This document shows positions 8,667-63,489 of a DNA stretch of 64,000 bases, one piece after another (position 1 is the first letter of the stretch; the number at the start of each line of letters is the position of its first letter). This stretch comes from Macrostomum lignano. Taxonomy: Eukaryota. The stretch spans positions 248,001-312,000 of the forward strand of contig NIVC01000416.1 of NCBI GenBank assembly GCA_002269645.1, written 5' to 3'. The notes beneath the pieces are model-generated. The model did not search any database. It saw nothing but the letters and a program-made list of their open reading frames with translations, and had not been told where the DNA came from. Made by a program: the position numbers and the translations under genes.

Positions 8667-9569
8667 ATGTCAACAGAAGCAACCTCTGGTACTGCAACGA
8701 CCGCCAATGCGGGGAACGCTCCAACGGCTTCAATCTCAGCATCAGCGGAACATCCGAACCCGATTGAGGAGTCATCACTAGCCACGGTAAGTCTCAAAAT
8801 ACCTTCTTTTTACAGGAACAACCCCGAAGCCTGGTTTCGGATGCTGGACGCCCAGTTCGAGCTGCGGAACATCACGTCGGAGAAGACTCGCTTCAGTCAT
8901 CTCATCTGCCAGCTCCCGGAAGACATCGCGTCCGTTCTCATCTCTACGACCACGCCGGCAAACTACAGTGACTTGAAGAAAGCCGTGCTCGCCATGCTCC
9001 AGAAAAGCAAGCAGGACAAAATCAACGAGGTCATGAACACCTCAGACCTGGGTGGCGACAAACCATCTGTTTTCGTCAAGCGTCTGACATCTAAGATGGC
9101 TCGGTGTGGCCTACAAGATAATCCGGATATGGTAAAGGCCACGCTGATTCGTTGTCTACCACCCGAACTGCAACGCCATCTGGCCTGCTTCCAAGAGCAG
9201 CAGACACCGGAGCAACTGGCTTCCATCGCCGATTCGCTGCTTGAAATCCAGCATTCCAAGATCAACACCGTCCAACCACGCGACACAACTCGACACACCG
9301 CAACGAGTTCACAACAGGAGACATCTCCGCAGCTGCCATCATTAGCACCCTACCGTCCAGGCCAGCGCCCGGTCATCTGTCGTGGACATCTCTATTACGG
9401 ACCCCGGTCGCGCACCTGTCGCCGCTGGTGCCAATTTCCACGAAAGAGCAACGGCCCACAACCAAGGATCCTGGGCCCCAACGAGCGGACCCCAGTACCG
9501 TCGCGCTCGAGCTCCCCGGAGCGACCGTCTCCGGAAAACTCCAGGGCACTACCCATGACGCCGCAGTGA
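8667..9569 (+). CDS. gag: retrotransposon Gag (300 aa)
   Basis: Intact ORF with [15 protein letters not shown] and a C-x2-H-x9-C-x3-C motif. Confidence 0.9.
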
Positions 9570-12500
9570 GCAGTGCCACGGACTCAGCGGCGCGCAAGTC
9601 CTGCCTCGTCGTCGAACTCCTATTCGATGCGCGTCGTTTGTCCTTCCTGGTCGACACCGGCGCAGCAGTTTCAATCATTCCTCCGCAGTACTTCAGCAAC
9701 AACGTCCGCGCAACAGGATATCAGCTAACAACCGCCACAGGCGACTTGATCCCAGTTGCCGGTGAGATTTCACTCGAAGTCGCAATTCGGGGACTACGCC
9801 GTTCCTTCCGTTGGACTTTTCTCGTCGCCTCCGTCGTTCGTCCAATACTCGGCTACGACTTCCTTTCCCACTTCGGACTGCTAGTAGACTGCAAGGCAAG
9901 ACGACTGGTGGACCCAACAACTCGACTCCACACTCCAGAACTGCCAGTCTCCACACTCAGCATCTCATCGTTTACCGTCACGCCAGCATATCCAGCCAAC
10001 TGCAACCCGCGGATCAAGCAGCTGATCGACCGCTATCAAGACACCTTCACCTACGTGGAGGGGGGTCGACTGCCGCCTGCAGACGCGGTAAAACACGACA
10101 CCGTCCATCGGATCGACACCGGCAACCAGCTACCGGTACATGCCCGAGCTCGTCAGTTGCACCCAGAGAAGCTGTCCATCGCCAAAGAGGAATTCCAGCA
10201 ATTGATCGACGCCGGTTACATCCGGCCATCCAACAGCTCATGGGCGTCACCACTTCACATGGTACCGAAAAAGTCGGATGGGAAACCCAACGGTAAGTGG
10301 CGTCCTTGCGGCGATTACCGTGCTCTTAATAAGGCTACCAAACCCGACAGCTATCCCGTACCACACATTCAGAGCTTCACTCAATATCTACACGGTGCAA
10401 CGACATTTAGCAAACTTGATTGATCTCGTCCGAGCCTACCATCAAATTCCGATTGCCGAAGAAGACATCCCGAAAACGGCTATCATCACTCCTTTCGGTT
10501 TGTTTGAGTGGACCCGCATGCCGTTCGGTCTCCGAAATGCAGCGCAGACCTTCCAACGCTTCATCGACTCGGTACTTCGCGGTCTGCCAGGTGTGATCGC
10601 ATACCTCGACGACCTCTTGGTTTACTCCAAGACCGAGGAGGAACACCTTCAACATCTTGAAGCCGTCCTGTCACGCCTGGCCCACCATGGATTGAAAGTT
10701 CAACTCAGCAAATGTGTCTTCCTGCAAAGCGAGATTAACTTCCTCGGGCATCACGTGTCGGCAGCAGGAATCCGCCCGTTGGAATCCAAGGTCGAGACCA
10801 TCAAGAAGTGGCCAGCACCACGCGATTCTGCAGCATTACGACGATTTTTAAGCGTGATTGGCTTCTACAGACGTTTCGTCCCAAACTTCGCTGACATCGC
10901 CGCTCCGTTGCAGGACCTCCTCACCGCATCACTACGGTCTCCCAGATCCTTCAACTGGAGCGACACACATCAGGCAGCATTCGAGGAACTCAAGTCGAAA
11001 CTGACCGAGCGACTTCTACTCAGCCACCCAGACCCAGATTGCTCGGCATATAAACTAGTCACGGATGCATCGGCAACTTGTGTCGGCGCCGCCTTACATC
11101 AAACCGTCGGAGACAGCACTACTCTGCTCGGAATGTACAGCAAGAAACTCTCATCGACACAGCAGACATACTCGGCATTCGACCGTGAGCTTCTCGCCGT
11201 TTACTTAGCCGTACTCCACTTCCGGAACCTGATCGAAGGTCGACACGTAACGGTCTTCACGGACCACAAACCACTCGAGCAGGCCTTCCGGCAAAACTCC
11301 TATGGAAAATCGGACAGAAACCAGCGCTATATGAGCGTCATCTCTGAGTACATCGCCGACATTCAATACCTTCGCGGAGCGGACAACATCGTAGCCGACG
11401 CCTTGTCGAGAATCGAGCACAACCCCATCGCAGCCATCACGCAAGACGACTCGCCAACTGATCTGCCAGCGATCGCCGCACAGCAGGCCCTCGACGGGCT
11501 CACAGAGGAAGACAACTGCCGATACTTCCCACTGGGAGACGACCGACGTGTCCTTTGCGAGACTTCCACAGGCTACCCACGACCAGTCGTCCCTGTCTCA
11601 ATGCGTCACGCACTGATCCGACATTTTCACCAGCTCGGACACTATGGATTCCGAAAGACGGCCAATCTCATCTCCAGTCGCTACTTCTGGCATAACATGC
11701 GCGACGAGATCAAGGAATACTGCCGAACATGCGAGGAATGCCAACGCTGCAAAGTAGACCGCCACACGACGGCTGGCAGCTCAGCATTCAACCTTCCGTC
11801 AAATCGCTTCGAAACCATACATCTAGACGTGGTCAGACCTCTTCCAGTCCCGGACAAGAACCAGCCCCGGTACCTTCTCACGATGATCGACAGGAACACC
11901 GGTTGGCTCGAAGCAGCACCACTCGAGACAGTCACAGCCCAGAGTATTGGAACAGCCTTCATCACAACGTGGATTTCGCGCTTTGGAGTCCTACTCTACG
12001 TCATTACGGATCGCAGACCTCAATTCGAAGCGGAGCTCTTCCACATCCTCTCGTCAGCTGTGGGTTTCCATAGGCTACGCACCACGGCGTACCATCCACA
12101 GTGCAACGGAAAAGTGGAGAGAGCACATCGCACTCTCAAGACCATGCTCAAAGCGCGAGGAGCTTCATGGCTTGACAACCTGCCTCTAGCATTGCTTGCG
12201 ATGCACATCGCACCAGATGATGCAGGTGTCAGCCCATTCACCAGGCTCACAGGCGAAAATCCGATGCTGCCTCGAGTCCTAGTCAACGCTTCAGACCCCG
12301 CGACGATCCAGTTGAACCTCGATCAACTTCTTGAACACCAGCCACGGCAACCGGTCATTAACAACACCTACACCCCGAAAGACCTTTGGACGGCCGAGAA
12401 AGTCTGGATCCGCGTAGACAGAGTTCGAAAGCCGCTCGAAGCGCCTTACTCCGGACCTTATACCGTCGTCCGGCGCACACCCAAGTTCTTCATAGTCGAG

Positions 12501-12788
12501 ACACGAGCCAAACAAGAGGAAGCAATCTCAATCGACCGTCTGAAGCCATGCCGTTCTGCAAGCCTACAGCAACCGAAGTCGATCCAAACGCCACCTACCA
12601 GCCGAACCCCTCGAGAGGCTCCTCAGGATGAGACGACGACAAACGAAAGGGAGAAAAAGGACGAGGCGACTCAACAGACGACACCGTCGACGACAGCCAG
12701 TAATGACAATGCCCAGGAGTCGCCAACTCGAACCAGGAGTGGACGACGAGTGCACTTCAACCCCAGAAAAGACTTTTTCTACTTCTGA
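9533..12788 (+). pseudogene. pol: retrotransposon Pol (protease, RT, RNase H, integrase), frameshifted at ~10420
   Basis: Motifs are FLVDTGAA (PR), [11 protein letters not shown] and YLDD (RT), TDAS/DRELLA (RH) and an HHCC-DDE integrase. A 4-bp duplication (AAACTTGATTGATCTC) breaks KLDLVRAYHQ. Confidence 0.9.
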
Positions 12789-15961: not shown

Positions 15962-18900
15962 ATGGCGCTACTACAGCTACAGCCGCCATCCGCATTCAGC
16001 ATTAGCGCGGACCCCCACACCGTCAGCAAGCGCTGGACAGAGTGGGCCACCACACTAAAGCGATTCTTGGCAGCATCAGGAATCTCGGACGACGCCCAGA
16101 AGCAGGAAATCCTCCTGTATACCGCGGGAAAAGAGGTTGCAGACATCTTTAAAGAGATCTCACAGACGCGTACCGCCACTGACCAGCCGGAGCAGCAAAC
16201 GCTTGACTCACTCATAGCGGCGCTAACTCAGCACTTTCAAGGACGCGACAATGTGGTGTTCACCCGGTACCAATTCCGCCAGTGCACGCAGCTAGACGGC
16301 GAAGGCATCGACAGCTGGTACAACCGACTGTGCAACGCGGCTGAGGCCTGCCAGTTCGGAGAGCTGCGCCAGTCCCTCATCCGCGACCAGATCGTCGCCT
16401 GCTGCCGCAGTGAATCCCTCCGAAAGCGGCTGCTCAACGTGCCCAACATCAGCCTCCCCGAGGCCCTCCAGCTGGCGAGAACAAACGAAGCAGCCAGCCA
16501 GCAAGCGGCAATCATGGAGCGCTCGGCAGCCGGACCAGCTGAAGAAGTGCACGCGGCACGCGACAAGCGCCCCACCAGGCGCCCGCCAGCCAGCCCGGCC
16601 GACAAATGCCTGCGGTGCGGAGAGCCCGGCCACCGCACTTGCAACCGAGCCCAAGGCAAGCGCTGCAGCAACTGCGGCAAGCTGCACCACCTGGCGAAGG
16701 CCTGCCTAAGCGGCCGCGCACGCATCATCATGGCAGAGCCTGAGCCAGAGGAACCAGCAGTGGCGCACCTGGCGGAGGCGGTATTCTCCAGCCTCGACCC
16801 CAGCCGCAAAAGCGCCACCTTCAAAGCGGTCATCAACGGCGCGAACGTACCCGTCCTGATCGACAGCGGTGCGAGCTGCAACGTGCTCAGCCAGCGGACC
16901 ATTCATCTAACGGGAGCACCCGAGCGGGCGCTTCAGCCCACGCACACAAGGGTCTATCCTCTCGGAGCAGCGAGGCCCCTGACACCCGCTGGCCAGATCA
17001 CTCTGCACACGAAGATCAACGGCAACTCGGAGAGAGTGCGCTTCATCGTCATCAGAGAGGACTGCATCACCATCCTAGGCCGCGAGACAAGCACGCAGAT
17101 GGGGATGCTGAGGGTCGGACCGCAGGCCGAGACAGCTCTCACCGCCGGACTGACACCAACGGTTAACGACCTGCACCTTCCGCAAGACTTGCGACTGTCA
17201 TCGATCATGAAGGAGTTCAGCGACAGGTTTCAAGGAATCGGCTGCATCAAGGGCGTCTCAGTCAGAATCCAGCTGAAGGAAGAAGCGGTGCCAGTCTGCC
17301 ACCCTCCGTCTCGAGTTCCAGTGCATCTTCGAACCGCCGTGGAAAAGGAGCTGAAGGGCCAGCTATCAGCCGGCATCCTGGAGCGAGTGACGGGGCCCAG
17401 CGCTTGGAGTTCACGCATGGTGGTCGTTCCAAAGGCCTCGCCAGGCGAAATCCGCATCACGCAGGACCTGAGGGACGTCAATAAGTACGTCATTCCAGAA
17501 AAGCAGCCAATACCGACATTCGAAGAAGTCACCGACGAGATGGCCGGTTCCACCTATTTCTCCGAACTAGACGTTGCCAAGGCCTTCCACCAGATCGAGG
17601 TCACCGAGGAGTCCCGGCAGCTGCTCACTTTCTCAACGCCTCTGGGCCTGCTCCGCCTCAAGCGCCTTTGCATGGGATTTACCTCAGCATCTGAAATCCT
17701 ACAGCGCGTCATGACATCTATCCTGAGCGGTTTGAGAGGCGTGCGGTGGGTCCATGACGATATCATTATCTTCGCCAGCACCATAAAGGAGCACAACGAG
17801 AGGCTGCGCAACTGCCTTGACAGGCTGCGTCAACACAACGTGACTCTGAACCCCCGCAAATGCCGCATTGCAACCCAGCAGGCCGACTTCCTGGCCATGC
17901 GCCTCTCGGCGGCCGGAATCCAACCGACCGAGGAAAAGCTGGAAGCTGTGGCCAACTTCAAGCGACCAGAAAATGCAACGGAGGTGCGGTCCTTTCTCGG
18001 ACTCGTCACATTCGTAGCCCGCTTCATCCCAAACCTCGCCGACAAAGCGAGGCCACTTCGAGAGCTGACCAAGAAGAACGTGAAATAGTCGTGGGGTCCA
18101 CAGCAAGCCTCAGCCTTTCAGACAATCAAGCAGTCGATCGCTCACAGCACCACGCTTGCCTTCTTCAACAAGAACTGCGAGACCAGGCTGATCGTCGACG
18201 CCAGCCCGACCAGCCTCGGGGCGATCCTCGCTCAGGTGCAACCTGGCGGCCTCACCAGGCCAATCGCCTACGCCAGCCTCAGTGACACCGAGCAGCGCTA
18301 CTCGCAGACAGAGAGAGAGGCGCTGGCCGTCAAATTCGGCTGCCTCAAGTTCCACCACTACCTTAGCGGCTGCCCAAAGTTCAAGGTCATCACCGACCAC
18401 AAGCCGCTGGTCAGCCTGCTCAGCCCCGGCTCACAGCCCCCGCCGCGGATCAAGCGCATGGCACTTCGGCTGCAGGATCTCCACTTCGAAGTCATCTACC
18501 AGCCGGGGGCAGATAACCCGGCAGATGTCCTAAGACGCCAGCCACGTCCAACACCACCGAAGAACGAGGGCGAGGATCTCGACACGGCCTACATCGCAAT
18601 GACAGCACAGGCAGCAGCGCCGAACAGCATCAGCCTCGACACGATCAAGGTGGCCGCCGCAGGCGACAAGGCGATCCAAGCCGCCGTATCCGGGCTCCGG
18701 TCCCATCGGTGGCAACTCGATAGCCACGACACGCGCAGCCTGCACGGCCTGCGGCACGAGCTCTCACAACACGACGGACTCCTGCTCAAAGGGCACCAAA
18801 TCGTCGTTCCTGCCATTCTGCACTACCGCTGCCTGCAGCTGGCGCACCAAGGCCACCTGGGTGTCCAAAAAACATTGGCACGCCTCCAGACAAAGGTCTG

Positions 18901-19975
18901 GTGGCCCTAAATGCGGGCCTCCGTCGAGAATTTCGTAAACTCCTGCCTCAGCTGCAAGGCCTGCACGAACACAGCCGAATTGAAGGCAGCCCCACTTCAG
19001 CCGACTGAGCTGCCGCAGGGGCCGTGGCTAGAGCTGGGCCTGGACTTCCTGGGACCGATCAGAGGCCACATTCTGCTGGTGTGCACCGACTATTTTTCAC
19101 GTTTCCCACTGGTACAGACGATGTCGGGGTCGACAGCGGCAGCTCCGGTCATCCGAACCCTCCGCCAGTGGTTCAGCACGTTCGGCCAGCCAGTCAAGAT
19201 CACCACCGACAACGGCCCGCCATTCTCGTCCGCAGAATTCAACGCCTTCCTGCGCAGCCAGGGCGTCCACCACCATCGGACTACGCCGCTGCATCCCCAA
19301 GCCAACGGACTCGTAGAGCGATGCAACCGAGGCCTCAATAAGGCAATCAGAGCGGCGATTCTGGAAGGCAGCGACTGGCAGGCGGCACTGGACGACTACC
19401 TGGCTGCATACCGGCGAACACCGCACGCAGCAACCGGCATGGCCCCAGCCGACCTGCTATTCGGCCGACAGCTCAACGACTCAATCCCCAGCTTGCGCCA
19501 CTCCCGGCCGGTTGACGCCAGGCGACAGACCGTCCGCGGCCACGACTCCAGGGCGAAGGAGCGGATGAAGGCCTTCGCCGACAGCAAGAGGGGCGCCACC
19601 GACCACCAGATCACCGTAGGCGACCTCGTACTCCGCCGGCTCACCAACCGCAGCAAGACCGACCCCTTCTTCGAGGCCTCGCCATGGACCGTGACAGAAG
19701 TCCGCGGCAACACCCTGCAGCTCCAACGGGCCGGCCAGAGGTGCTCCAGGCACGCAAGCCACGTCAAGCGAGTCTCCCAGGCAGCCGACGAGTGGCCGGA
19801 TGACCCCGGAGAACGCAACAGCGGACAGGACAGCCGGCCGGATGAACCAACCGGCCCGCCCGAGCCAACCGGCAACCAGGACGTCCCTCTCGCCAACAGG
19901 CCGCACCCCCGACAGGCCAAGGAGACGCCGAAACGCTACGAAGAGGGCGACCGGCGAAAGGCTCTGGACATCTGA
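15962..19975 (+). pseudogene. Gag-Pol polyprotein with two in-frame stops (18086-18088, 18908-18910)
   Basis: The ORFs starting at 15962, 18236 and 18911 share one frame. Motifs are two Cys/His knuckles, LIDSGAS protease, RT (VHDD), RNase H (VDAS..EREALAV) and integrase (HQGH..CLSC, LDF, TDNG, NGLVER). Confidence 0.92.
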
Positions 19976-25750: not shown

Positions 25751-25821
25751 GATTTTGGAAGTTTCATCATATTTCAAAAAAATTTCACTCTACTGCATGC
25801 TCTATAGTAAACTGCCACACT

Positions 25822-28750
25822 ATGTCTGGCCAACAATCAGAAGATGCCATACCAGTGCTATCAAGGCCTGATTTACCAGGCAATCACACTGCCGCCATTG
25901 AGAGTCTACTGACCCACTATAGTAAAACATTTGACAATTCCAAACCGGAATTTGTTGCCAGAGCACCAGGCCGCGTAAATCTCATTGGCGAGCACATTGA
26001 CTATTGCGGCTACTCTGTCCTGCCTATGGCCATCGATCGGCACATTCTTATTGCGGTTGGCTATCCTAGTAATGCGCGTAGCAACCAAAATGAACGCTCA
26101 TCTTCAACACTGAGAATTTTTCATATCGATAGTAGTGATCGACCAGCTGCCACTGTCACAGTTGAAGCGGACGGGGTGGCTGTAGATAAAGAAAACCTGG
26201 CCTGGCATCAGTATGTTCTGTGTGGATTTCGCGGCGTGCAAGACTACCTGTTGAAGGTGTGTTTCTTTTCTAAGAAGCATAACCTCTTGTGTTACATAAG
26301 TTTCATTTCATAATTTCCATAAATAATCCCAGGGAGGCGGATTTCCCCAGCTAGACATCAACCTCATGGTCACTGGCGATATTCCATCCAGTTCCGGTCT
26401 ATCCAGCAGCAGCGCTTTAGTTGTCTGCTCCGCTTTAGTTGCTATGCGAGCCTACACTGGTAGTTTGAGCCTGCTGGATAGGCGGGGCATGGCTTCCCTG
26501 TGCGCCACTGCCGAGCGGTACATTGGCACCGAGGGCGGCGGCATGGACCAGGCCATCTCACTGTGCGCCAGGCCCGGCCAGGCTATGTGGATTAACTTCA
26601 AATCTGGATTGGAAACCCGACCGGTGAGAGGCGCCCGATTTCTGGCTGGTTGAAACAAAGCCGGAAGTGGGGTTTAACGCCAAGAAAACATCCTAATTCA
26701 GCCGAAAGTGGGATTTAGTGCCAAGAAAACCATCCTGATTCAACCGGAAGTGGGATTTAGTGCCAAGAAAACCATCCTGATTCAACCGGAAGTGGGATTT
26801 AGTGCCAAGAAAACCATCCCGATTCAACCGGAAGTGGGATTTAGTGCCAAGAAAACCATCCCGATTCAACCGGAAGTGGGATTTAGTGCCAAGAAAACCA
26901 TCCTGATTTAACCGGAAGTGGGATTTAGTGCCAAGAAAACCATCCTGATTTAACCGGAAGTGGGATTTATTGCCAAGAAAACCATCCTGATTCAGCCGAA
27001 AGTGGGATTTAGTGCCAAGAAAGACCATCCCGATTCAACCGGAAGTGGGATTTAGTGCTAAGAAAACCATCCTGATTTAACCGGAAGTGGGATTTAGTGC
27101 CAAGAAAGCCATCACGGTTCAACCGGAAGTGGGATTTAGTGCCAAGAAAACCATCCTGATCCAGCCGGAAGTGGGATTTAGTGCCAAGAAAACCATCACG
27201 ATTCAACCGGAAGTGGGATTTAGTGCCAAGAAAACCATCCTGATCCAGCCGGAAGTGGGATTTAGTGCCAAGAAAACCATCCTGATTTAACCGGAAGTGG
27301 GATTTAGTGCCAAGAAAACCATCCTGATTTAACCGGAAGTGGGATTTAGTGCTAAGAAAACCATCCTAATCCAGCCGGAAGTGGGGTTCTTGGCTAGGCT
27401 CTGATTCAGTCGGACATGATGATACTTTTTGAAAGTTTGCGATATTAAAATAATTTTTGCTGCCTTTGCAACCTAGGTAAATCTGCCACCAGGCTACAGC
27501 TGGGTGGTGGCTCACTGCGGTCAGGTGCTCAACAAGGCGGCCACCGACCAGTTCAATCAGCGTGTTGCCGAGTGCCGTCTCGCCGCCAGGTTGCTTAGCA
27601 AAAATACCGACTCTGCCAATATGCGTCTGGTGGATGCGCAGGTAGGTAACCGCGCTTCCGGTACTGACATCCTCTCTTGCCGATACTGATATCCTCTGCA
27701 CTCCCCGATCCTGATATCCGCACTCCCCGATCCTGACATTCTCACTCCCGATCCCTGACAACCTCATTCCCGATCCCGGGATGTGGAGCCTACCTGACAC
27801 TCTCACTCCAGATCCCTGACACCCTGACTTCCCAATCCTGACACCCTCACTCCCGATCCTGACATCCTAACTTCCCGATCCTGACACCCTAACTCCCGAT
27901 CCTGACACCCTAACTCCCGATCCTGACACCCTCACTCCCGATCCTGACACCCTCACTCCCGATCCTGACACCCTCACTCCAGATCCTGACACCCCAACTC
28001 CCGATCCTGACACCCTCACTCCCAATCCTGACACCCTAACTCCTGATCCTGACACCCTAACTCTCGATCCTGACACCCTCCCTCTTGACCTTGACACCCT
28101 CACTCCCATCTTGTCTCCACCCTGACACCTGAACCTGACCTACTGAATCAATCGGAACTCCTCAGGATGCTCTTGGCGTGACCCAGCCAGGCGCCGCGGC
28201 CGATCTCGCAGCCCAGCGCCTTCGAGCCGAGCCACCCTACAGCCTGGCCGAGGTGGCGGCCGAACTGTCTGTTGAATCGTCAGCTCTGTCCGCCATCTGC
28301 CTGACATCAGAGGCTGCCAAACGGCTGGCCGGATTCCAGCTCCGTCAGCGAGCTCTGCACGTATTCAACGAGGCCCAACGCGTGCTGGACTTTCGAGACG
28401 CTTGCGGCCGAGCTGGCAGCGGTGACAACGACGAGAATTTGGCTGCCAGGCTGGGCGAGCTGATGAACGCGAGTCACCAGAGCTGCTCGGAGCTGTACAA
28501 CTGCTCCTGTCCGGAGTTGGACCGGCTCTGCCAGATCTGCCGGGACGTCGGCGGCGCTCTGGGCAGCCGTTTGACCGGCGCCGGCTGGGGCGGCTGCTGC
28601 GTCTCGCTGGTGCCTGACAGCAGGGTTGAGAAATTCCTCAGCAGCGTCAGGGACGCCTTCGCTGGACCAACTGGACTGGTTGGCGGTCGGCCGTTTCTGG
28701 CCTTCGCTAGTTCGCCTAGCACGGGAGCCTACCTACTGCAGTTAAATTAA
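25822..28750 (+). CDS. GALK2: N-acetylgalactosamine kinase / galactokinase 2 (491 aa); exons 25822-26256, 26333-26623, 27477-27641, 28166-28750
   Basis: GHMP motifs APGRVNLIGEHIDYCGYSVLPMAI, IPSSSGLSSSSA, GGGMDQ, NKAAT..FNQRVAECRLA and GSRLTGAGWGGC. All three introns are GT-AG and phase 0. Confidence 0.95.
26660..27385 (+). repeat. 42-bp minisatellite in GALK2 intron 2
   Basis: Unit AACCGGAAGTGGGATTTAGTGCCAAGAAAACCATCCTGATTC, ~17 copies. Confidence 0.95.
27680..28135 (+). repeat. 21-bp minisatellite in GALK2 intron 3
   Basis: Unit CCGATCCTGACACCCTCACTC. Confidence 0.9.
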
Positions 28751-28899
28751 CCGTCTGGTTGGATGCTTTGCCTAAATCTGTACGGCTAGCTAACAGCATG
28801 GATTCTGTGAGCAGTATGCTTCTAACACTAGCTTTAATATTATTGAGCAGCTTTTTTCTTTAAAAATGTTATTAAAAAAACTTTAAAAAATCGCCTTTG

Positions 28900-30355
28900 A
28901 ACTTTTTCATAAGAATCGCCCTTGAGCTGTCTCAGAACTGAAAACCCACTTGAGCTGTCTCAGAAGATTCGCCCTTGAGCTGTCCTAGAAGGATCGCCCT
29001 TGAGCTGTCTCAGAACTGAAAACCCACTTGAGCTGTCTCAGAAGATTCGACCTTGAGCTGTCCTAGAAGAATCGCCCTTGAGCTGTCTCAGAAGAATCGC
29101 CCTTGAGCTGTCTCAGAAGATTCGCCCTTGAGCTGTCCTAGAAGAATCGCCCTTGAGCTGTCTCAGAACTGAAAACCCACTTGAGCTGTCTCAGAAGATT
29201 CGCCCTTGAGCTGTCCTAGAAGAATCGCCCTTGAGCTGTCTCAGAAGAATCGCCCTTGAGCTGTCTCAGAAGATTCGCCCTTGAGCTGTCCTAGAAGAAT
29301 CGCCCTTGAGCTGTCTCAGAAGAATCGCCCTTGAGCTGTCTCAGAACTGAAAACCCATTTGAACTTTTTCATAAGAATCGCCCTTGAGCTGTCTCAGAAC
29401 TGAAAACCCATTTGAACTGTCTCAGAAGAATCGCCCTTGAGCTGTCTCAGAAGAATCGCCCTTGAGCTGTCTCAGAAGAATCGCCCTTGAGCTGTCTCAG
29501 AAGAATCGCCCTTGAGCTGTCCTAGAAGAATCGCCCTTGAGCTGTCCTAGAAGAATCGCCCTTGAGCTGTCTCAGAAGAATCGCCCTTGAGCTGTCTCAG
29601 AACTGAAAACCCATTTGAACTGTCTCAGAATAATCGCCCTTGAACTGTCTCAGAACTGAAAACCCACTTGAGCTGTCTCAGAAGATTCGCCCTTGAGCTG
29701 TCCTAGAAGAATCGCCCTTGAGCTGTCTCAGAAGAATCGCCCTTGAGCTGTCTCAGAAGATTCGCCCTTGAGCTGTCCTAGAAGAATCGCCCTTGAGCTG
29801 TCTCAGAAGAATCGCCCTTGAGCTGTCTCAGAACTGAAAACCCATTTGAACTTTTTCATAAGAATCGCCCTTGAGCTGTCTCAGAACTGAAAACCCATTT
29901 GAACTGTCTCAGAAGAATCGCCCTTGAGCTGTCTCAGAAGAATCGCCCTTGAGCTGTCTCAGAAGAATCGCCCTTGAGCTGTCTCAGAAGAATCGCCCTT
30001 GAGCTGTCCTAGAAGAATCGCCCTTGAGCTGTCCTAGAAGAATCGCCCTTGAGCTGTCTCAGAAGAATCGCCCTTGAGCTGTCTCAGAACTGAAAACCCA
30101 TTTGAACTGTCTCAGAATAATCGCCCTTGAACTGTCTCAGAACTGAAAACCCACTTGAGCTGTCTCAGAAGAATCGCCCTTGAGCTGTCTCAGAAGAATC
30201 GCCCTTGAGCTGTCCTAGAAGAATCGCCCTTGAGCTGTCCTAGAAGAATCGCCCTTGAGCTGTCTCAGAAGAATCGCCCTTGAGCTGTCTCAGAAGAATC
30301 GCCCTTGAGCTGTCTCAGAAGAATCGCCCTTGAGCTGTCTCAGAAGAATCGCCTC
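28900..30355 (+). repeat. 25-bp satellite with higher-order structure
   Basis: Unit GAAGAATCGCCCTTGAGCTGTCTCA with AACTGAAAACCCA variants. A rare variant block recurs at 29354 and 29841. Confidence 0.95.
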
Positions 30356-30959
30356 CAGCCATATTTATTTTAACTTAATTACTATTTTTTATATAATACG
30401 GATTCCTATTCTGTCAGAGTAAGTCGACAAATTTTGATTTTTTACAACGCAATTTTCGGTGTATTTCATTTGTTAAATCGTGCATAGTTTTTGATCTAGT
30501 TCAATATAAGGTGCCAATGTCTATTATTAGTAATCAATTTTCCACTCCTTATAATTAAATTTTACTAACGCCTTTTAACACTTCTAAGAATAAATTTTTC
30601 CTGAACTTTAACGGCATTCTTGTTTAGTTAGACAAACTTACATAATCGATGGAAAAAAGGTTTTTTTATAACCCATACTAGAAAATAAAACGGTGATGAA
30701 TTTTAATTAAACAGTTTGTGGCATCTTTTATTTGTGATTTTATAGCTACGACACTGTCACTAAGGCCAACCCCCTAAGGACACTAGGACACTAAGGACAA
30801 TATTTAAAACAGAGATGATAATGATTTTTTCAGCTCTCCGCAATTAAATCTGGTCGAACGCTGCACACTCTACTGACCAGTGCTAGTAGTAGTAGTATAA
30901 TTAGTGCTACTAGTCCGAGCTTTACCACCAGCGGCATCGTCAGTAGTTGCGGCAGCGGC

Positions 30960-31340
30960 ATGGGCAACAAGCAGAGCAGCGACGGCAAGTCCAATTTAAC
31001 ACCTGCCGAGTTCATCGTTGACACGGTGAAGCGCAACCCTGTAGTTGTGTTCAGCAAGACCACCTGTCCCCACTGCGTCCAGGTGAAGTCTCTGTTTGGC
31101 CAGCTGAAAGTGCCCGCTACTGTTATCGAACTGGACAAGCGTCAAGATGCTGACAAGCTTCATCCGGAGCTAATTAAACAGACCGGTGCCAGAACTGTGC
31201 CCCAGGTGTTTGTCTGCGGCCAACGCGTGGGCGGCGCCTCGGACACGATGTCCCTGCACAAGGCTGGCGGCCTCGAGGAGCTCATCGCCAAATGCTGGAA
31301 GCCGTCCAGGTGCGGCGGGTCCAAGTGCGATGGAGCCTGA
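30960..31340 (+). CDS. GLRX2: dithiol glutaredoxin (CPHC), GLRX2-like, 126 aa; the frame stays open upstream to an acceptor at 30833
   Basis: VVVFSKTTCPHC, TVPQVF and GGASDT..LHKAGGL resemble GLRX2. The N-terminus is MGNKQS. Confidence 0.9.
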   Translation: MGNKQSSDGKSNLTPAEFIVDTVKRNPVVVFSKTTCPHCVQVKSLFGQLKVPATVIELDKRQDADKLHPELIKQTGARTVPQVFVCGQRVGGASDTMSLHKAGGLEELIAKCWKPSRCGGSKCDGA

Positions 31341-31479: not shown

Positions 31480-32150
31480 CAAATGTGTGAAAGTGCGCGT
31501 GTACTAGTGTGTGAAAGTTCGCGTGTACTATTGTGTGAAAGTTCGCGTGTTCTGTTGTGTGAAAGTGCGCGTGTACTATTGTATGAAAGTTCGCGTGTTC
31601 TGTTGTGTGAAAGTGCGCGTGTACTAGTGTGTGAAAGTTCGCGTGTACTAGTGTGTGAAAGTGCGCGTGTACTAGTGTGTGAAAGTTCGCGTGTACTAGT
31701 GTGTGAAAGTTCGCGTGTACTATTGTGTGAAAGTTCGCGTGTTCTGTTGTGGGAAAGTGCGCGTGTACTAGTGTGTGAAAGTGCGCGTGTACTATTGTGT
31801 GAAACTGTGTGTGTACTATTGTATGAAAGTGCGCGTGTGCTATTGTGTAAAAGTGCGCGTGTACTAGTGTGTGAAAGTGCGCGTGTACTATTGTGTGAAA
31901 CTGTGTGTGTACTATTGTATGAAAGTGCGCGTGTGCTATTGTGTAAAAGTGCGCGTGTACTAGTGTGTGAAAGTGCGCGTGTACTATTGTGTGAAACTGT
32001 GTGTGTACTATTGTATGAAAGTGCGCGTGTGCTATTGTGTAAAAGTGCGCGTGTACTAGTGTGTGAAAGTGCGCATGTACTTTTGTGTGAAAGTGCGCAT
32101 GTACTAGTGTGTAAAAGTGCGCGTGTACTTTTGTGTGATATGCGCGTGTA
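31480..32150 (+). repeat. 24-bp minisatellite
   Basis: Unit GTGTGAAAGTGCGCGTGTACTAGT, with 72-bp higher-order triplets at ~31790-32060. Confidence 0.95.
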
Positions 32151-55088: not shown

Positions 55089-57940
55089 AATTAAAAATCT
55101 GTAGACTATAGTTATAAGATAGAAATTTCCTTGTGATGAGTTAGTTATTCTAAGCCGAGTCAGTCAAGTTGTAACTGTTATTCTGTTAAGTGAGGCCTTC
55201 TCAACTGCGCTCTTCTGTTTCTTGTCTCTTTTGAAGCGCTTGCCTTTTGAAAAGAATGAGAGTGAAGGGTCAGTCAGTCACTCACTGTCCTTCACTCTGG
55301 CTAAAGCCCGTTCACTCGCAGAGTAAAGGAAGATAGGATGACGGTTTAATTATAATTGACGAGAGCTTGCGGAGTCGGGGTCAGTAAAGAGAGATACGAG
55401 ACGCGGAGTAGGGAGGTTTGGAAGAGGGGTTGGGGTAGGTTGGACTGCGGAGGGAGGGGGGGGGCTGATGGCCAACCAAGCTCACTGCTGCTCCAGTCCA
55501 GACTGTCAAAATTTGGCGTGGGCACGACGGGACGGGTCGTAATAAAACGTCAAATAAATTTATACACAGTCACGGCAGACTTGGCAGAGCGGCAATTGCT
55601 ATTGCTAAACGGAGCTTGAGCAGGGGGGGGGGGCTTGCCTTGCAATACAAAAGAGAATGAATGAATGAAAGAGCGATCTTTCTTTTTAATAACTCGGTTC
55701 TGCTCTCTCTGTGAACAGAGCGGCAAGCGGGTGGAGAGGGTGCTGACTGCCGTCGCTGGTTGGCTAAATAACAAAAGTGGCAGCTCTCAAAGGAAAATTA
55801 TACCCATGCAACAAACACTAAGGCAGCTAAGCGGATTCTTCTGACTTCTTGAAGTTGTGCCGCCGTCTTTTGTAGGTTTGGATTGGGTTGGATTGACTGC
55901 CAACGCCAAGCCTGTCTCTTTAGTCTTTACAGTTCTCAGACTGGCAGCTTAAAGCTGACTGCAGGTTTAGTTATGCCGGTGGCCCGTATATTATAATTGG
56001 TTTCCTCCTTGTGGGTGGCACAGTGGCAGGCATAAAATCTCTCTTGTTTCGTCTGGACCCGGACCCCGGTTGGGGTTGGGAGAGTGCGCCAGCCGGGCAT
56101 TGGAGGGTCCGGGGTCCCTTCTTTACCCCCACCTCACTCCCCGGGGGTTGAGGCGGTTGAAACAATCGCAAGTTAAACCACAGCGGGAGGCATATTATAA
56201 GAACGGTTATATAGCATAGTATGAATAATAGTCCAAGTATACCTAATTGACGTTAGTACAAAACCACTACAACAAAGCTTACAGGACAGTAGACACCGGT
56301 TATATTATATTTTTTACTTCAAACTCAAGACATTTAGAGAATTAATTAATAACAGAAATACGCTGACTAGACTAATGTAATGCTTTCGAAGAGCTACCAC
56401 TTTTATATTCTAAGCAAGCTACAAATCAAAATATCATGCTGATACCCTTGTTTGTATATTATTTGTATTTGTATTACAGTTATTTGTATTATTTGTATAT
56501 TTTAATACAAAATATTCAAACGCATATTCCGAAACACAAACTACTATAAGTAGACGAAGGAGAGGTCCGTAAAGACCACAATTTTTATTAGGCATTTAAT
56601 CCGCTGCTGCAGATCACTTTGTGTTTGTATTCATTAAGGGAATTAAGAAAGGATAATTAGGAACAAGAAGTCGACAATCTGAACGCGTATTAACCACCTG
56701 CGTGAGTTTAAGCACACAACAGAATTTTATGCAACGGCTGCTCTTGATGCAAGCAAATGTTTTGTTTTCAATGGACATTTATTTATCAAAGGTAACATAA
56801 AAGTGAAACAAATTAAACAAACAGTCAATTTTTTTCTAACTTTATTTTCGACACAAAAATATATTTAGATCAAATGGTTTTTATTGTATATGCATAAGAA
56901 TAATTAACACATACCTGCTCTATGTATTACCTTCTTAGCTAATCGGCAGACATTGAAAGGTGAACACACCAAGGCGGCAACAAACTTCAAACTAAATTAG
57001 CCGGGAAAAGCAAAGTAAGACTTGTAAGACAAAGCAATTGCTCAGCTAGTGCAGCCAGTAGAAAAAGCGCATATAGCACGTAACTAAGCGCATGAAAGCT
57101 AAAGAGAGAGATGAGACCGCGCCTCACGGGTCAGCAGATTAAGGAATGAGCTAAATCTATAATTAGCCAAATAATTAGCCAATGAATCAACAACTAAAAT
57201 TTTGATTTCTCACTATATTATTAATAAAGCAAAATGGTAGAAACACTCAAAGCTTAGTAATGATTACATCCGATTGGAATGGCCAAAATGCCTTGAATAA
57301 ATTTTTACATATTATAAGAATAATTAAAGGAACAAAACTGTGTATTTAAATAAATAAAAAAGAATAAAACAAACCAATTACAGGTGCAAAGCAAGCAAAA
57401 ATGTCAGACAACAACACAATTCCCAAAGAAGAGTCAAAATCAACACAGCGATAATTTTTCTCCACAGAATCAAACACAGACAGTTGATTGGTTGCCTCAG
57501 ATTCGGACACGCGGCACAAGTTGAGAGGCAACAAGTCGTACAGCAAAGAAAAAAACAGAAACTGCAACAACAGTTCCACTAATCAAGGTAATTATTAGTA
57601 AGTTTTTTTATAAGTCCGATTCTGCAAACAAGGAAAGAAAAGACACACGTTACGTAACTTTCATTATATTGAAGTTGTACCTTCTTGTATATACTACTTA
57701 CTTGCTTAGTAGATCGAATTTCTTTGGCTTTAACCGTCTATTTATACTACTTAGTTCAACGAGTAATAAGTAGGGTGAACGATTATAATTCTTGAAACAG
57801 TTGACGCTGTTAAGCAGGCATGAACTGGATGTAAATATTAAATAACTAATTATTGTGGCCATATATTAATTAGTAGAATAAAATTACACACTGAGCTGTT
57901 ATTACAATCAATATAATCATAATTATGAATAGTTATTAAA

Positions 57941-60900: not shown

Positions 60901-61769
60901 TTGACAGGACACAGCTACTAATCAACCGGTATGTTTGACAGGACACAGCTACTCATCAACCGGTATGTTTGACAGGACACAGCTACTCATCAACCGGTAT
61001 GTTTGACAGGACACAGCTACTCATCAACCGGTATGTTTGACAGGACACAGCTACTCATCAACCGGTCCTTTGGTGGTTAATACTTGAAAAAAGGGACGAG
61101 ACAATGATAAAGTTAGTAGAGATTTTAAAAGAAATAAAACAAAATTAGACACAGAAGAACCTACTTCGAGTAATAGAAATGTCACAAAATGTCTAAAAAG
61201 GACACAACAGACTCTTACTTAGACTCGGCGCCCGTATAACCGTGCAAACAATTGCTCTCCATATAGTCCAATAGGCCGCGCAAAAACTCGTGCGCATCCT
61301 CTTGCCGATTAAGGCGCATTGTAGGCGATATAGCGCTCAATCTGTTCATGAAAGCGCGCGGATAACAGGCCGACCCGGGACCGCAGCTGTAGCGCTTATA
61401 ATAGCGCACAAATTCACAAACTGCGCACCATTTGTCAACGCTAGGCACAATTCTACAAGTCGACACGTGACTGCTCAATACGAAATTGATAAAAGCCGGC
61501 GTGTGCAGCAGAGACTGGAGCACAGAGATCATATAGCAGTAGTTGCCTTCGTTAGTGAAGCCAAACGGTAGACCAGTGTAGCTGTGCTGCAGCTGTACCA
61601 GCTTGTAGGAGAATAGCTTTGGTTGCTGCAGTTGCTGCTGCTGCTGCTGCAGATGCTGCTGCCTGTCTCCATTCAATAAGCTGTGATGCCCGTAGCCGTT
61701 CGACGTTGAAGCGATCGATCCGTTGCTATTAGAGCCATTCTGCTGCTGCTGCAGGATGGGTGCCAGCAT
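57941..61769 (-). CDS. USP36: ubiquitin-specific protease USP36/42 family (scrawny-like, ~764 aa); exons 61219-61769, 58736-60326, 57941-58093
   Basis: Cys box GFTNEGNYCYMISVLQ, RQEDAHEFL, C-x2-C zinc pairs (CSKC, CEKC) and His box GHYYCYAK..WWCLND..PYILFY. Introns are GT-AG, phase 2 and phase 0. The start is inferred. Confidence 0.9.
58225..58690 (+). repeat. 15-16-bp minisatellite in the last USP36 intron
   Basis: Unit GCAGTTGCATAAGC(GC). Confidence 0.9.
60400..61070 (+). repeat. 34-bp minisatellite in USP36 intron 1
   Basis: Unit GGACACAGCTACTCATCAACCGGTATGTTTGACA. Confidence 0.95.
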
Positions 61770-61974
61770 CCCGGGACGCTGGGCGGCAATTGATGAAGCC
61801 AGAATTGTCAAATTAGTATCACTTGTAACCAGATGAATTTATTATATTGATTAATATCTAATTAGATACCAGAACTGCGGCGACTCAATTCGGCATGCGT
61901 TCAGATCTGGAATGTTTGGCAACCTTTCTGATTAAGCTACTAAAAGTAGTATTATGATTCAATTTTAGGTTTAC

Positions 61975-62212
61975 ATAATATTAATAATTGATTACACCTG
62001 CCTTAATGGGCATCTGAAGGCTGCGTACGGCTGTTCAGTCCAAGGACTGGGGGGTCGCCACACACACCCTCAATTACCTCAGCTGGGTGAACTCAAGCAA
62101 TGCAGAGTCAAGTGTCTTGCTCAAGGACACAAATTGTTCCGAGTGGGTCGAGAATCGAACCCCCGACCTTCAAGTCGTGAGTTTGACGCTTTAACCACTA
62201 GGCTACAACCCC
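61975..62212 (-). mobile_element. CORE-like SINE copy D (intact tRNA-like head, internal deletions)
   Basis: Head GGGGTTGTAGCCTAGTGGTTAAAGCGTCAAACTCACGACTTGAAGGTCGGGGGTTCGATTC contains A and B boxes. Confidence 0.85.
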
Positions 62213-63433: not shown

Positions 63434-63489
63434 CTGCGGATGCGAGAAATATATTGAATTTGATGAGTTTGTCAACAATGATTGCCGCC

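What the first reader, a model, noticed from the sequence alone, without database searches (positions are those of the whole stretch)
30826..31340. Glutaredoxin with a hidden in-frame presequence behind a splice acceptor: possible spliced-leader-AUG switch between mitochondrial and myristoylated isoforms
Seen: a TTTTTTCAG acceptor ends at 30833. It is followed in phase 0 by 42 open codons with no ATG (LSAIKSGRTLHTLLTSASSSSIISATSPSFTTSGIVSSCGSG) that run directly into MGNKQS. The 42-mer has no D/E, is S/T-rich and carries K/R/H, as mitochondrial presequences do. MGxxxS is the N-myristoylation consensus. Known: vertebrate GLRX2 has a mitochondrial isoform made with an alternative first exon, and flatworm spliced leaders end in an AUG that can initiate translation. 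Inference: an SL (or a tiny upstream exon) joined at 30834 would supply the Met for a mitochondrial form, while the ATG at 30960 gives a membrane-anchored form. One exon would then serve two compartments.
Basis: partly seen in the sequence, partly recalled or inferred. Interest (0 to 1): 0.72.

Follow-up and report, generated by a model that had tools for sequence, protein, structure and literature searches.

The report
Flatworm glutaredoxin with open in-frame leader
A glutaredoxin-2-type gene of the flatworm Macrostomum lignano has 42 stop-free codons between a probable spliced-leader acceptor and its conserved start codon, so a longer protein could be made, but nothing yet shows that this longer form goes to mitochondria.

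Summary
TTTTTTCAG ends at 30833. Forty-two in-frame codons with no stop and no ATG follow, running into ATG 30960. That ATG opens a 126-aa single-exon glutaredoxin.

The window is Macrostomum lignano. Its spliced leader (SL) ends in ATG, and its trans-splice acceptor motif is [T/C]TNCAG. The deposited gene model is a 5'-partial ORF starting at 30837, so the annotated mRNA begins 1-3 nt after that CAG. I put trans-splicing at about 0.75; a TATA/Inr-like promoter is the main rival. A trans-spliced mRNA would carry two in-frame AUGs: the SL AUG in weak context (169 aa) and the internal AUG in strong context (126 aa).

The Met-Gly start is invariant across 15 aligned GLRX2-type relatives. Fifteen of 16 N-termini fit the N-myristoylation pattern. 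Vertebrate GLRX2 also puts alternative N-terminal extensions directly before this MGN.

The mitochondrial claim is weak. The extension has one Arg and one Lys, is AGT-microsatellite-like, has UTR-like composition, and has no detectable homologue.

SL-AUG initiation and trans-splicing-dependent mitochondrial/cytosolic redox isoforms are already known in flatworms. Verdict: partly supported, moderate interest, a new member of a known kind.

The parts
25801..28750 (+). Upstream same-strand gene: N-acetylgalactosamine kinase/GALK2-like, 498-aa annotated product. It is the possible first gene of an operon-like pair with the glutaredoxin.
   Evidence: The gene call with GalKase_gal_bdg/GHMP_kinases_N/C Pfam hits is. 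The last exon matches N-acetylgalactosamine kinases. An ATTAAA lies at 28871.
28798..28806 (+). The only upstream ATG-to-GT mini-exon that could cis-splice in phase 0 to 30834 (ATGGATTCT|GTGAGC). It lies in the GALK2 3'UTR and is not in the deposited model.
   Evidence: Found by enumerating all ATG...GT combinations in 28751-30800.
28889..30353 (.). 25-nt tandem repeat array (57 copies) that fills most of the GALK2-Grx intergenic space. Without it the spacer is about 618 nt.
   Evidence: TRF; sequence. The operon criterion of <1 kb after removing repeats is from PMC8629364.
30801..30809 (+). TATTTAAAA, a TATA-like element 31 nt upstream of A30832 in TTCAGCT (Inr-like). It is the basis of the rival reading that this is a transcription start.
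   Evidence: Sequence. Three such TAT[AT][AT]A[AT] matches occur in the 480-nt unique upstream region, so the match carries little information.
30816..30824 (+). Three consecutive in-frame stop codons (TGA TAA TGA) that close the frame just upstream of the acceptor.
30825..30833 (+). TTTTTTCAG, the probable SL trans-splice acceptor.
   Evidence: It matches the M. lignano motif [T/C]TNCAG. On the + strand between the GALK2 stop and the ATG there are only two such matches. The annotated 5'-partial ORF starts at 30837.
30834..30959 (+). Forty-two in-frame codons with no stop and no ATG in any frame. This is a 5' leader, or an N-terminal extension if translated from the SL AUG.
30960..31340 (+). 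Single-exon GLRX2-type dithiol glutaredoxin CDS (126 aa plus stop). The start context AGCGGCATGG is strong.
   Evidence: Pfam PF00462. The best solved relatives are zebrafish Grx2 3uiw (1.1e-26) and human GLRX2.
30960..30980 (+). MGNKQSS, an N-myristoylation-type N-terminus. Met-Gly is invariant in relatives.
   Evidence: PROSITE PS00008 matches in 15 of 16 family N-termini. M43 and G44 are invariant in A1.
31065..31076 (+). Active-site CPHC. This is a dithiol site with Pro, unlike the CSYC of mammalian and gecko GLRX2.
   Evidence: Translation; alignment.
31484..32150 (.). 24-nt satellite (28 copies) starting 144 nt after the stop codon. No canonical poly(A) signal occurs before 32454.
   Evidence: TRF; signal scan.

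Best explanation
This is the 5' end of a single-exon, GLRX2-type dithiol glutaredoxin gene of Macrostomum lignano.

Most likely (about 0.75) T6CAG at 30825-30833 is a real spliced-leader acceptor. The gene would then be the downstream partner of an operon-like pair with GALK2. The mature mRNA would be SL(35 nt)+CTCTCC... with two in-frame AUGs and no other AUG between them.

The first AUG is the SL's own 3'-terminal AUG. Its context is poor (U at -3, C at +4), and it opens a 169-aa ORF. The second is AUG 30960, in a strong context (G at -3, G at +4), and it opens the 126-aa protein.

The conserved product is the 126-aa protein. Its Met-Gly-Asn-x-x-Ser N-terminus is shared with GLRX2 relatives and fits the N-myristoylation pattern.

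Leaky scanning would let some ribosomes start at the SL AUG. That would give an extended protein that cannot be myristoylated. On present evidence the 42-codon leader looks more like a UTR that happens to be open and in frame than like a selected mitochondrial presequence.

Shown: the sequence anatomy, the SL sequence and acceptor motif (from the literature), the 5'-partial gene model, and the family conservation of the MG start.

Inferred: trans-splicing at this site, use of either AUG, myristoylation, and any localisation.
For: - Organism and gene model.
- The SL ends in ATG, the acceptor motif is [T/C]TNCAG, 30% of genes are trans-spliced, and the operon rule is <1 kb after removing repeats: PMC8629364.
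- The site matches the motif, and only two + strand matches lie in the 2.2 kb upstream of the ATG.
- The deposited product P0001 lacks a Met and starts at 30837, four codons after the triple stop. The annotated mRNA must therefore begin at 30835-30837.
- The annotation pipeline cut transcripts at mapped SL-read peaks and called ORFs with TransDecoder: PMC5730564.
- The repeat-adjusted spacer to GALK2 is about 618 nt.
- Two in-frame AUGs, their contexts, and no AUG between them.
- The MG start is invariant, and relatives' N-termini align to Met 30960.
- The leader is UTR-like. GC by codon position is 0.36/0.71/0.45 against 0.58/0.44/0.73 in the CDS. AGT is used for 9 of 14 Ser codons against 0 of 9 in the CDS. 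It contains an (AGT)n repeat.
- Its charge is only +2.
- No homologue aligns convincingly to residues 1-42.
- In-frame SL AUGs are common in flatworms: 28% of S. mansoni trans-spliced mRNAs and 143 of 187 E. granulosus SL clusters.
Against: - No SL-containing read or cDNA could be inspected. Trans-splicing rests on the motif plus the annotated 5' end.
- A TATA-like box at -31 and an Inr-like TCAGCT fit a plain transcription start equally well in position.
- An open, in-frame, acid-free 42-codon leader is uncommon by chance: 1.3% of shuffles before the factor of three for frame.
- The first 18 residues (MLSAIKSGRTLHTLLTSA) are amphipathic. Only 4% of shuffles of the first 20 extension residues reach the same hydrophobic moment.
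- The GLRX2 family is repeatedly dual-localised. A selected presequence is therefore not excluded.
- Codon usage is heterogeneous here. GALK2 exon 1 has GC3 0.42 and AGT for 5 of 14 Ser codons, so the compositional argument is weak.
Confidence: 0.5

Rival explanations
1. The SL AUG joined at 30834 starts a 169-aa precursor whose 42-residue extension is a mitochondrial presequence. AUG 30960 gives an N-myristoylated, membrane-associated form. One exon would then serve two compartments, by leaky scanning or by a mix of trans-spliced and unspliced transcripts.
For: - All the evidence for trans-splicing and the in-frame SL AUG applies.
- The extension has no D/E, has K/R/H within the first 12 residues, and has an amphipathic segment KSGRTLHTLLT with muH 0.56.
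- The weak-then-strong AUG arrangement with no AUG in between is what leaky scanning needs.
- Family precedent: marmot, squirrel, shad and mandarin-fish GLRX2 have long isoforms whose extensions end directly before MGN, and short isoforms that start at MGN.
- Yeast Grx2 uses two in-frame AUGs for mitochondrial and cytosolic forms (Porras 2006, cited in PMC11653698).
- E. granulosus TGR makes mitochondrial and cytosolic variants through alternative trans-spliced mRNAs (Agorio 2003, via PMC2873472).
- Plant GRXC1 is N-myristoylated (PMC13621322).
Against: - The extension has only one Arg and one Lys, net +2, against +3 to +7 in seven family presequences.
- The C-terminal 25 residues are an uncharged Ser/Thr run encoded by an AGT microsatellite-like tract.
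- The codon-position GC pattern is unlike the CDS.
- There is no homologue of the extension and no second Macrostomum sequence to test conservation.
- No predictor (TargetP, MitoFates) was available.
- The finding was selected after the fact.
Confidence: 0.18
2. There is no trans-splicing. TATTTAAAA (30801) and the Inr-like TTCAGCT form a core promoter, and transcription starts at about 30832. The 126 nt are then an ordinary AUG-free 5'UTR, and only the 126-aa protein is made.
For: - The TATA-like T lies at -31 from A30832, and the Inr matches YYANWYY at 6 of 7 positions.
- The neighbouring GALK2 model also starts about 30 nt after a TATTTC element and is also 5'-partial, with no AG before it. 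Annotated 5'-partial starts are therefore not always acceptors.
- A leader without an AUG is typical of UTRs.
- The leader's composition is UTR-like.
- About 60-70% of M. lignano genes are not trans-spliced.
Against: - TATA-like strings are frequent in this 33% GC region: three in 480 nt.
- YTNCAG ending within 3 nt of a given point is expected less than 1% of the time, since there are about 173 matches per strand in 64 kb. It is found at 44% of trans-splice sites.
- Transcript ends assembled from RNA-seq rarely stop this sharply unless a mapped SL peak set them.
- The short repeat-adjusted distance to a same-strand upstream gene fits the operon pattern.
Confidence: 0.22
3. A small upstream cis exon supplies the Met. 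The only candidate in phase 0 is ATGGATTCT|GTGAGC at 28798-28806, spliced over a 2,027-nt intron to 30834 to give MDS-LSAIK...
For: It is the only phase-0 ATG...GT combination in 2 kb, and its donor GTGAG matches the M. lignano donor consensus GT[G/A]AG.
Against: It lies 48 nt after the GALK2 stop codon, inside that gene's 3'UTR and upstream of its ATTAAA, so it has no promoter of its own. The deposited model has no such exon and is 5'-partial at 30837. An Asp at position 2 would weaken any presequence.
Confidence: 0.03

Closest known systems
Flatworm SL 3'-terminal AUG used as initiator methionine (Cheng et al. 2006, J Biol Chem 281:733; 'slORFs', PMC9851317)
   Same: The SL ends in AUG, and joining at the acceptor puts this AUG in frame with the downstream ORF with no stop between. 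The phenomenon has been shown experimentally in flatworms and is common: 28% of S. mansoni trans-spliced mRNAs are in frame, and 143 of 187 E. granulosus SL clusters are.
   Different: In the documented cases the SL AUG is needed to restore the orthologous N-terminus. Here the orthologous N-terminus is the internal Met 42 codons downstream, so the SL AUG would add an extension rather than complete the protein. Use of the SL AUG in M. lignano was not found in the papers read.
Echinococcus granulosus thioredoxin glutathione reductase: alternative trans-spliced mRNAs for mitochondrial and cytosolic variants (Agorio et al. 2003, cited in PMC2873472)
   Same: A flatworm thiol-redox enzyme with a Grx domain, one gene, SL trans-splicing, and two compartments.
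   Different: In TGR there are two different trans-splice sites (exon 1 against exon 2) fed by two promoters. Here a single acceptor and a single mRNA with two AUGs would have to do the job. The short form would be lipid-anchored rather than simply cytosolic.
Vertebrate GLRX2 (Grx2a mitochondrial; Grx2b/c and predicted short isoforms)
   Same: These are the best solved and named relatives (3uiw, 2cq9, 2ht9, 2fls). The common part begins with Met-Gly-Asn-x-x-Ser-Ser. Long isoforms carry an extension ending directly before it (...AASG|MGNHASS in marmot...CGSG|MGNKQSS here). Short isoforms start at MGN.
   Different: Vertebrates use alternative first exons with their own ATG (from my own knowledge for human and mouse; isoform sets). 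Mammalian and gecko GLRX2 have a CSYC active site (the fish and ray sequences in A1 have CPYC), and mammalian, gecko and teleost GLRX2 have a Cys pair (NC...QC). The flatworm protein has CPHC and Pro in place of the first Cys of that pair. It therefore probably lacks Fe-S cluster binding and the structural disulfide.
Saccharomyces cerevisiae Grx2: two in-frame AUGs give mitochondrial and cytosolic forms (Porras et al. 2006, cited in PMC11653698)
   Same: A dithiol glutaredoxin with one mRNA and two in-frame starts, where the longer form carries the presequence.
   Different: Both AUGs are encoded in the gene. No SL and no myristoylation motif are involved.
Arabidopsis GRXC1, an N-myristoylated class I glutaredoxin (Riondet 2012; Schlosser 2024, via PMC13621322)
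   Same: A class I Grx with an MG N-terminus, membrane-attached through myristate.
   Different: It belongs to a plant lineage, and no alternative mitochondrial form from the same gene is described. Myristoylation of animal GLRX2-type proteins was not found in the library searches.

Membership tests
Class I dithiol glutaredoxin, GLRX2-type | Glutaredoxin fold/domain (PF00462) | tested here: met
   Pfam hit E=1.6e-15, 57.4 bits against a cut-off of 22.9.
Class I dithiol glutaredoxin, GLRX2-type | CxxC active site plus the glutathione-binding TVP and GG motifs | tested here: met
   C78 and C81 (CPHC), T121-V122-P123 and G133-G134 are invariant columns in A1.
Class I dithiol glutaredoxin, GLRX2-type | Closest solved or named relatives are Grx2 rather than Grx1, Grx5 or the TGR Grx domain | tested here: met
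   3uiw zebrafish Grx2 scores 1.1e-26 and human GLRX2 1e-22. Grx1-type chains score 1e-12 to 1e-14 and TGR about 1e-11. Named hits are 'glutaredoxin 2'.
Class I dithiol glutaredoxin, GLRX2-type | Pro-free CSYC active site that allows [2Fe-2S] binding, as in mammalian Grx2 | tested here: not met
   The active site is CPHC. A Pro in the active site is reported to prevent cluster coordination (PMC13621322).
Class I dithiol glutaredoxin, GLRX2-type | Extra Cys pair (N-C-VVIF ... Q-C) seen in mammalian, gecko and teleost Grx2 | tested here: not met
   The first Cys is replaced by Pro (RNPVVVF). Only the C-terminal Cys (AKCW) is present.
SL trans-spliced gene of M. lignano | [T/C]TNCAG acceptor directly at the 5' end of the mature transcript | tested here: met
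   TTTCAG lies at 30828-33, and the annotated 5'-partial ORF starts at 30837.
SL trans-spliced gene of M. lignano | RNA-seq reads or cDNAs carrying the 35-nt SL joined at the site | not testable with these tools
   No read data are reachable. Exact look-ups of the SL-AUG form (169 aa), the 168-aa and the 126-aa forms found nothing, and the only product on record is the genome annotation's.
SL trans-spliced gene of M. lignano | Operon-type spacing: a same-strand upstream gene less than 1 kb away after removing repeats | tested here: met
   2,083 nt minus the 1,465-nt tandem array gives 618 nt.
SL-AUG-initiated ORF (Cheng 2006 type) | SL AUG in frame with the main ORF with no stop between | tested here: met
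   The model mRNA has an AUG at nt 33 that opens a 169-aa ORF. This is conditional on trans-splicing at 30834.
SL-AUG-initiated ORF (Cheng 2006 type) | SL AUG required to match the conserved orthologous N-terminus | tested here: not met
   Relatives' N-termini align to the internal Met-Gly (M43, G44 invariant). No hit aligns convincingly to residues 1-42.
Mitochondrial matrix presequence | No acidic residues, net positive charge, Arg-rich | tested here: inconclusive
   D/E count is 0, but there is only 1 Arg, 1 Lys and 1 His, net +2. Seven Grx family presequences have +3 to +7.
Mitochondrial matrix presequence | N-terminal amphipathic helix | tested here: inconclusive
   Maximum hydrophobic moment is 0.56 (KSGRTLHTLLT), similar to family presequences. 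It is reached by 4% of shuffles of the first 20 extension residues. This is a crude measure, not a predictor.
Mitochondrial matrix presequence | Positive call by TargetP/MitoFates, import or cleavage shown | not testable with these tools
   No such predictor or experiment was available.
N-myristoylated protein | Met-Gly start fitting G-{EDRKHPFYW}-x(2)-[STAGCN]-{P} | tested here: met
   MGNKQSS fits the pattern, as do 15 of 16 family N-termini. Gly2 is invariant.
N-myristoylated protein | Myristate attachment shown (NMT assay, analogue labelling) | not testable with these tools
   This needs an experiment.

The most novel reading that the evidence does not exclude
One trans-spliced M. lignano mRNA yields two proteins by leaky scanning. 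The first is a mitochondrial Grx2 whose initiator Met is not encoded in the gene at all but is donated by the spliced leader. The second is an N-myristoylated, membrane-bound Grx2 from the internal AUG. Beyond this gene, the invariant Met-Gly-x-x-x-Ser/Thr start of GLRX2-type proteins marks an old and so far unrecognised myristoylated isoform of animal glutaredoxin 2. This start is seen in flatworm, mollusc, Lepidoptera and vertebrate short isoforms.
Probability: 0.15. Interest if true: 0.55.

Novelty: new member of a known kind. Interest (0 to 1): 0.35.

Why it matters
If the long form is real and imported, it would be a clean case in a free-living flatworm that can be made transgenic. A targeting signal would depend on a start codon supplied in trans by the spliced leader, so trans-splicing itself would decide where the enzyme goes. 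That would extend what is known from the TGR of a tapeworm (Echinococcus).

The family-wide Met-Gly-x-x-x-Ser start matters whatever happens at this locus. It suggests that the short GLRX2 isoforms of animals may be lipid-anchored, which would bear on where this redox enzyme acts.

If the leader is only a UTR that happens to be open, the locus is an ordinary trans-spliced gene. It then stands as a reminder that TransDecoder-style 5'-partial ORFs in the M. lignano annotation overstate protein N-termini.

Tried and rejected
1. RNA-level evidence. Exact look-ups of M+168 aa (the SL-AUG form), the 168-aa and the 126-aa products found nothing. P0001's cluster has a single, genome-derived member. 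No transcript-derived protein of this gene is in the collection.

2. Paralogue test of the extension.
- The USP36-like neighbour has a 97% paralogue on NIVC01000494.1. The fetched locus aligns to the window only from 56683 to 64000 and does not reach a Grx copy.
- A search with the GALK2 last exon, intended to reach the paralogous GALK2-Grx pair, returned no M. lignano protein at all.

3. Orthologues with extensions.
- The exhaustive HMMER search gave no close flatworm orthologue; the best hit outside the gene itself was under 60% identical.
- The few alignments reaching into residues 11-42 are Ser/Thr-rich transit peptides of distant Grx proteins, which reflects composition and not homology.
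- The Logan contigs for P0133 and P0102 are not flatworm transcripts. One has an in-frame stop right before its ATG.

4. Codon usage as a coding test. The leader differs strongly from the Grx CDS. However, GALK2 exon 1 is equally AT-rich at third positions, so the test is only suggestive.

5. The bacterial-type promoter/terminator scan does not apply to a eukaryote.

6. No SL sequence or SL RNA gene lies in the window, so this is not a retrocopy of a trans-spliced mRNA.

7. USP gene models start with Met, so they could not calibrate how annotated 5' ends relate to acceptors.
Full report
**What the sequence shows**

- TGA TAA TGA lie in frame at 30816-30824.
- TTTTTT lies at 30825-30830 and CAG at 30831-30833.
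- Forty-two stop-free codons run from 30834 to 30959, encoding LSAIKSGRTLHTLLTSASSSSIISATSPSFTTSGIVSSCGSG.
- ATG 30960 then opens a 126-aa ORF ending at 31340.

The ORF is a glutaredoxin (PF00462, E=1.6e-15) with a CPHC active site. The 126 nt contain no ATG in any frame.

In dinucleotide shuffles of the 126 nt, frame 0 stays open in 5.5% and open without Asp/Glu in 1.3%. Among arbitrary 126-mers of the window, 23% are open. The spacing must also be a multiple of three. The pattern is therefore expected in a few percent of leaders of this length. That is unusual, but it will occur many times in a genome with more than 20,000 trans-spliced genes.

**Where the window comes from**

The product is on record once, from NIVC01000416.1 of GCA_002269645.1. 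A neighbouring gene is named BOX15_Mlig003458g2 [Macrostomum lignano]. This is the annotated Mlig_3_7 assembly (PMC5730564).

M. lignano has a single 35-nt spliced leader, CGGTCTCTTACTGCGAAGACTCAATTTATTGCATG, which ends in ATG. About 30% of its genes are trans-spliced. The top motif at trans-splice sites is [T/C]TNCAG, found at 9,551 of 21,754 sites (PMC8629364).

**Is 30833/30834 a trans-splice acceptor?**

TTTCAG at 30828-30833 fits the motif. On the + strand only two such hexamers lie between the upstream gene's stop and the ATG.

The deposited product P0001 is 167 aa, has no initiator Met, and begins SAIKSG at 30837. The frame is closed by three stops only four codons earlier. A 5'-partial ORF of this kind therefore means the annotated mRNA starts at 30835-30837, which is 1-3 nt after the CAG.

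The annotation pipeline cut transcripts at peaks of SL-trimmed reads and called ORFs with TransDecoder. A sharp end next to a canonical acceptor is what it would produce at a true trans-splice site. This link from the gene model to SL reads is my inference; I could not see the reads.

The upstream same-strand gene is GALK2-like, with its stop at 28750. It lies 2,083 nt away, but 1,465 nt of that is a 25-nt tandem array. The repeat-adjusted spacer of 618 nt is within the 1-kb rule used to call operons in this species.

Against this, TATTTAAAA at 30801 lies 31 nt before A30832 in TTCAGCT. That looks like a TATA box plus initiator. The neighbouring GALK2 model is also 5'-partial, starts about 30 nt after a TATTTC element, and has no AG before it. 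TATA-like strings are common in this AT-rich stretch, with three in 480 nt, so they weigh less than the acceptor match. I put trans-splicing at about 0.75 and a plain transcription start at about 0.22.

**What a trans-spliced mRNA would encode**

SL plus exon gives an mRNA with AUG number 1 at nt 33 and AUG number 2 at nt 162.
- AUG 1 has the context UAUUGCAUGC, with U at -3 and C at +4. It opens 169 aa.
- AUG 2 has the context AGCGGCAUGG, with G at -3 and G at +4. It opens 126 aa.
- No other AUG lies between them.

A weak first AUG followed by a strong second AUG in the same frame is the classic layout for leaky scanning. Flatworm SL AUGs can initiate translation (Cheng 2006, cited in PMC9851317, PMC12582326 and PMC3510090). 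In-frame SL AUGs are common: 28% in S. mansoni and 143 of 187 SL clusters in E. granulosus.

**The short form**

The best solved relatives are zebrafish Grx2 (3uiw, 1.1e-26) and human GLRX2. Named relatives are 'glutaredoxin 2' of vertebrates and a limpet.

In an alignment of 15 sequences, Met43 and Gly44 of the extended translation are invariant. This is the Met-Gly at 30960. Many relatives begin exactly there. Fifteen of 16 such N-termini fit the PROSITE N-myristoylation pattern.

ATG 30960 is therefore the conserved start, and a myristoylatable N-terminus is a family trait. Plant GRXC1 is a proven myristoylated glutaredoxin. I found no paper in the library linking animal Grx2 to myristoylation.

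**The long form**

The family gives real support to the architecture. Marmot and ground-squirrel GLRX2 have 162-aa isoforms in which a presequence ends ...AASG directly before MGNHASS. They also have 122-aa isoforms that start at MGN. Shad and mandarin fish show the same pattern. The flatworm reads ...CGSG|MGNKQSS.

The 42-mer itself is a weak presequence.
- It has one Arg, one Lys and one His, all within the first 12 residues. Net charge is +2, against +3 to +7 in seven family presequences.
- The remaining 30 residues are an uncharged Ser/Thr-rich run encoded by an AGT-rich, internally repeated tract.
- GC by codon position is 0.36/0.71/0.45 against 0.58/0.44/0.73 in the CDS. AGT encodes 9 of 14 Ser codons against 0 of 9 in the CDS. 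GALK2 exon 1 is similarly AT-rich at third positions, so this is only suggestive.
- The first 18 residues (MLSAIKSGRTLHTLLTSA) are amphipathic, with a moment of 0.56 reached by 4% of shuffles.
- No homologue aligns convincingly to the extension.
- I could not obtain a second Macrostomum copy to test conservation.

**Other routes to a Met**

The only upstream ATG...GT mini-exon in phase 0 is ATGGATTCT|GTGAGC at 28798-28806. It sits inside the GALK2 3'UTR and is absent from the deposited model. I give it 0.03. In-frame near-cognate codons (ACG 30858, CTG 30861 and 30873) lie downstream of Lys and Arg, leaving at most His. They could not make a presequence.

**Verdict**

The most likely reading (0.5) is a trans-spliced GLRX2-type gene whose conserved product is the 126-aa Met-Gly protein. 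Its leader happens to be open and in frame with the SL AUG. Some extended, non-myristoylatable protein may be made, but there is no evidence for a dedicated targeting role.

A non-spliced promoter reading is at about 0.22.

**Comparison with what is known**

The mechanism is not new in kind.
- SL-AUG initiation is established in flatworms.
- E. granulosus TGR makes mitochondrial and cytosolic variants through alternative trans-spliced mRNAs.
- Yeast Grx2 uses two in-frame AUGs.
- Vertebrate GLRX2 uses alternative first exons.

What would be new is the combination: one acceptor, a Met donated in trans, and a lipid-anchored alternative form.

As a GLRX2 relative the protein differs in two respects. 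Its CPHC active site contains a Pro, which argues against Fe-S cluster binding. It also lacks the first Cys of the Cys pair seen in mammalian, gecko and teleost GLRX2.

Noticed in passing
Protein alignment A1 and proteins P0003-P0006, P0043, P0044, P0049, P0063, P0069, P0083, P0102, P0120, P0122, P0133, P0134, P0160, P0164, P0165, P0171, P0173: GLRX2-type glutaredoxins start, or have short isoforms that start, with Met-Gly-x-x-x-Ser/Thr. This holds for vertebrates (gecko, ray, rodents, teleosts), a limpet, Lepidoptera and unnamed eukaryotes. Fifteen of 16 fit the N-myristoylation pattern. No paper in the library links animal Grx2 to myristoylation.
   Followed up: partly
window 28889-30353: A 25-nt tandem repeat (AATCGCCCTTGAGCTGTCTCAGAAG, 57 copies, with 231/256-nt higher-order periods) fills 70% of the GALK2-Grx intergenic region.
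   Followed up: partly
window 31484-32150: A 24-nt satellite (TGTGTGAAAGTGCGCGTGTACTAT, 28 copies) begins 144 nt after the Grx stop. No AATAAA or ATTAAA occurs before 32454, so the 3'UTR either ends without a canonical signal or runs through the satellite.
   Followed up: no
window 25790-25822: The annotated GALK2 product is also 5'-partial, starting at 25801, seven codons before its ATG at 25822. The bases just before it are TGCATG, identical to the last six bases of the SL, and there is no AG. This could be a true transcription start (TATTTC at -30), or an artefact in which genomic TGCATG was trimmed as SL.
   Followed up: partly
window 38623-38636: The ETS-like gene model starts ATGCATTTTTCAG|ACATT. 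A TTTTTCAG acceptor-like site lies right after the annotated ATG. An SL joined there would have its AUG out of frame with the annotated ORF, and the SL-AUG frame stays open for at least 45 codons.
   Followed up: no
window 8667-12788 and 15962-19975: Two long retrotransposon gag-pol-type ORF sets (protease, reverse transcriptase and integrase motifs) in GC-rich blocks. Together with many satellites they make up much of the window.
   Followed up: no
window 56683-64000 against L004 (NIVC01000494.1:295115-318860): The USP36-like gene region has a second copy on another contig. It is 97% identical in protein and 92-95% in DNA. Collinearity stops at window 56683. This is consistent with the duplicated chromosome or hidden polyploidy reported for the DV1 line.
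   Followed up: partly
proteins P0008-P0016: The strongest non-self hits to the Grx domain are proteins of unknown origin with 3-5 tandem glutaredoxin domains, 327-1,034 aa long (for example P0008, 502 aa, four domains).
   Followed up: no
window 31065-31076 and 31290-31337: The glutaredoxin has an unusual CPHC active site and a Cys-rich C-terminal tail (CWKPSRCGGSKCDGA). Fish GLRX2 and P0069 also carry Cys-rich tails.
   Followed up: no
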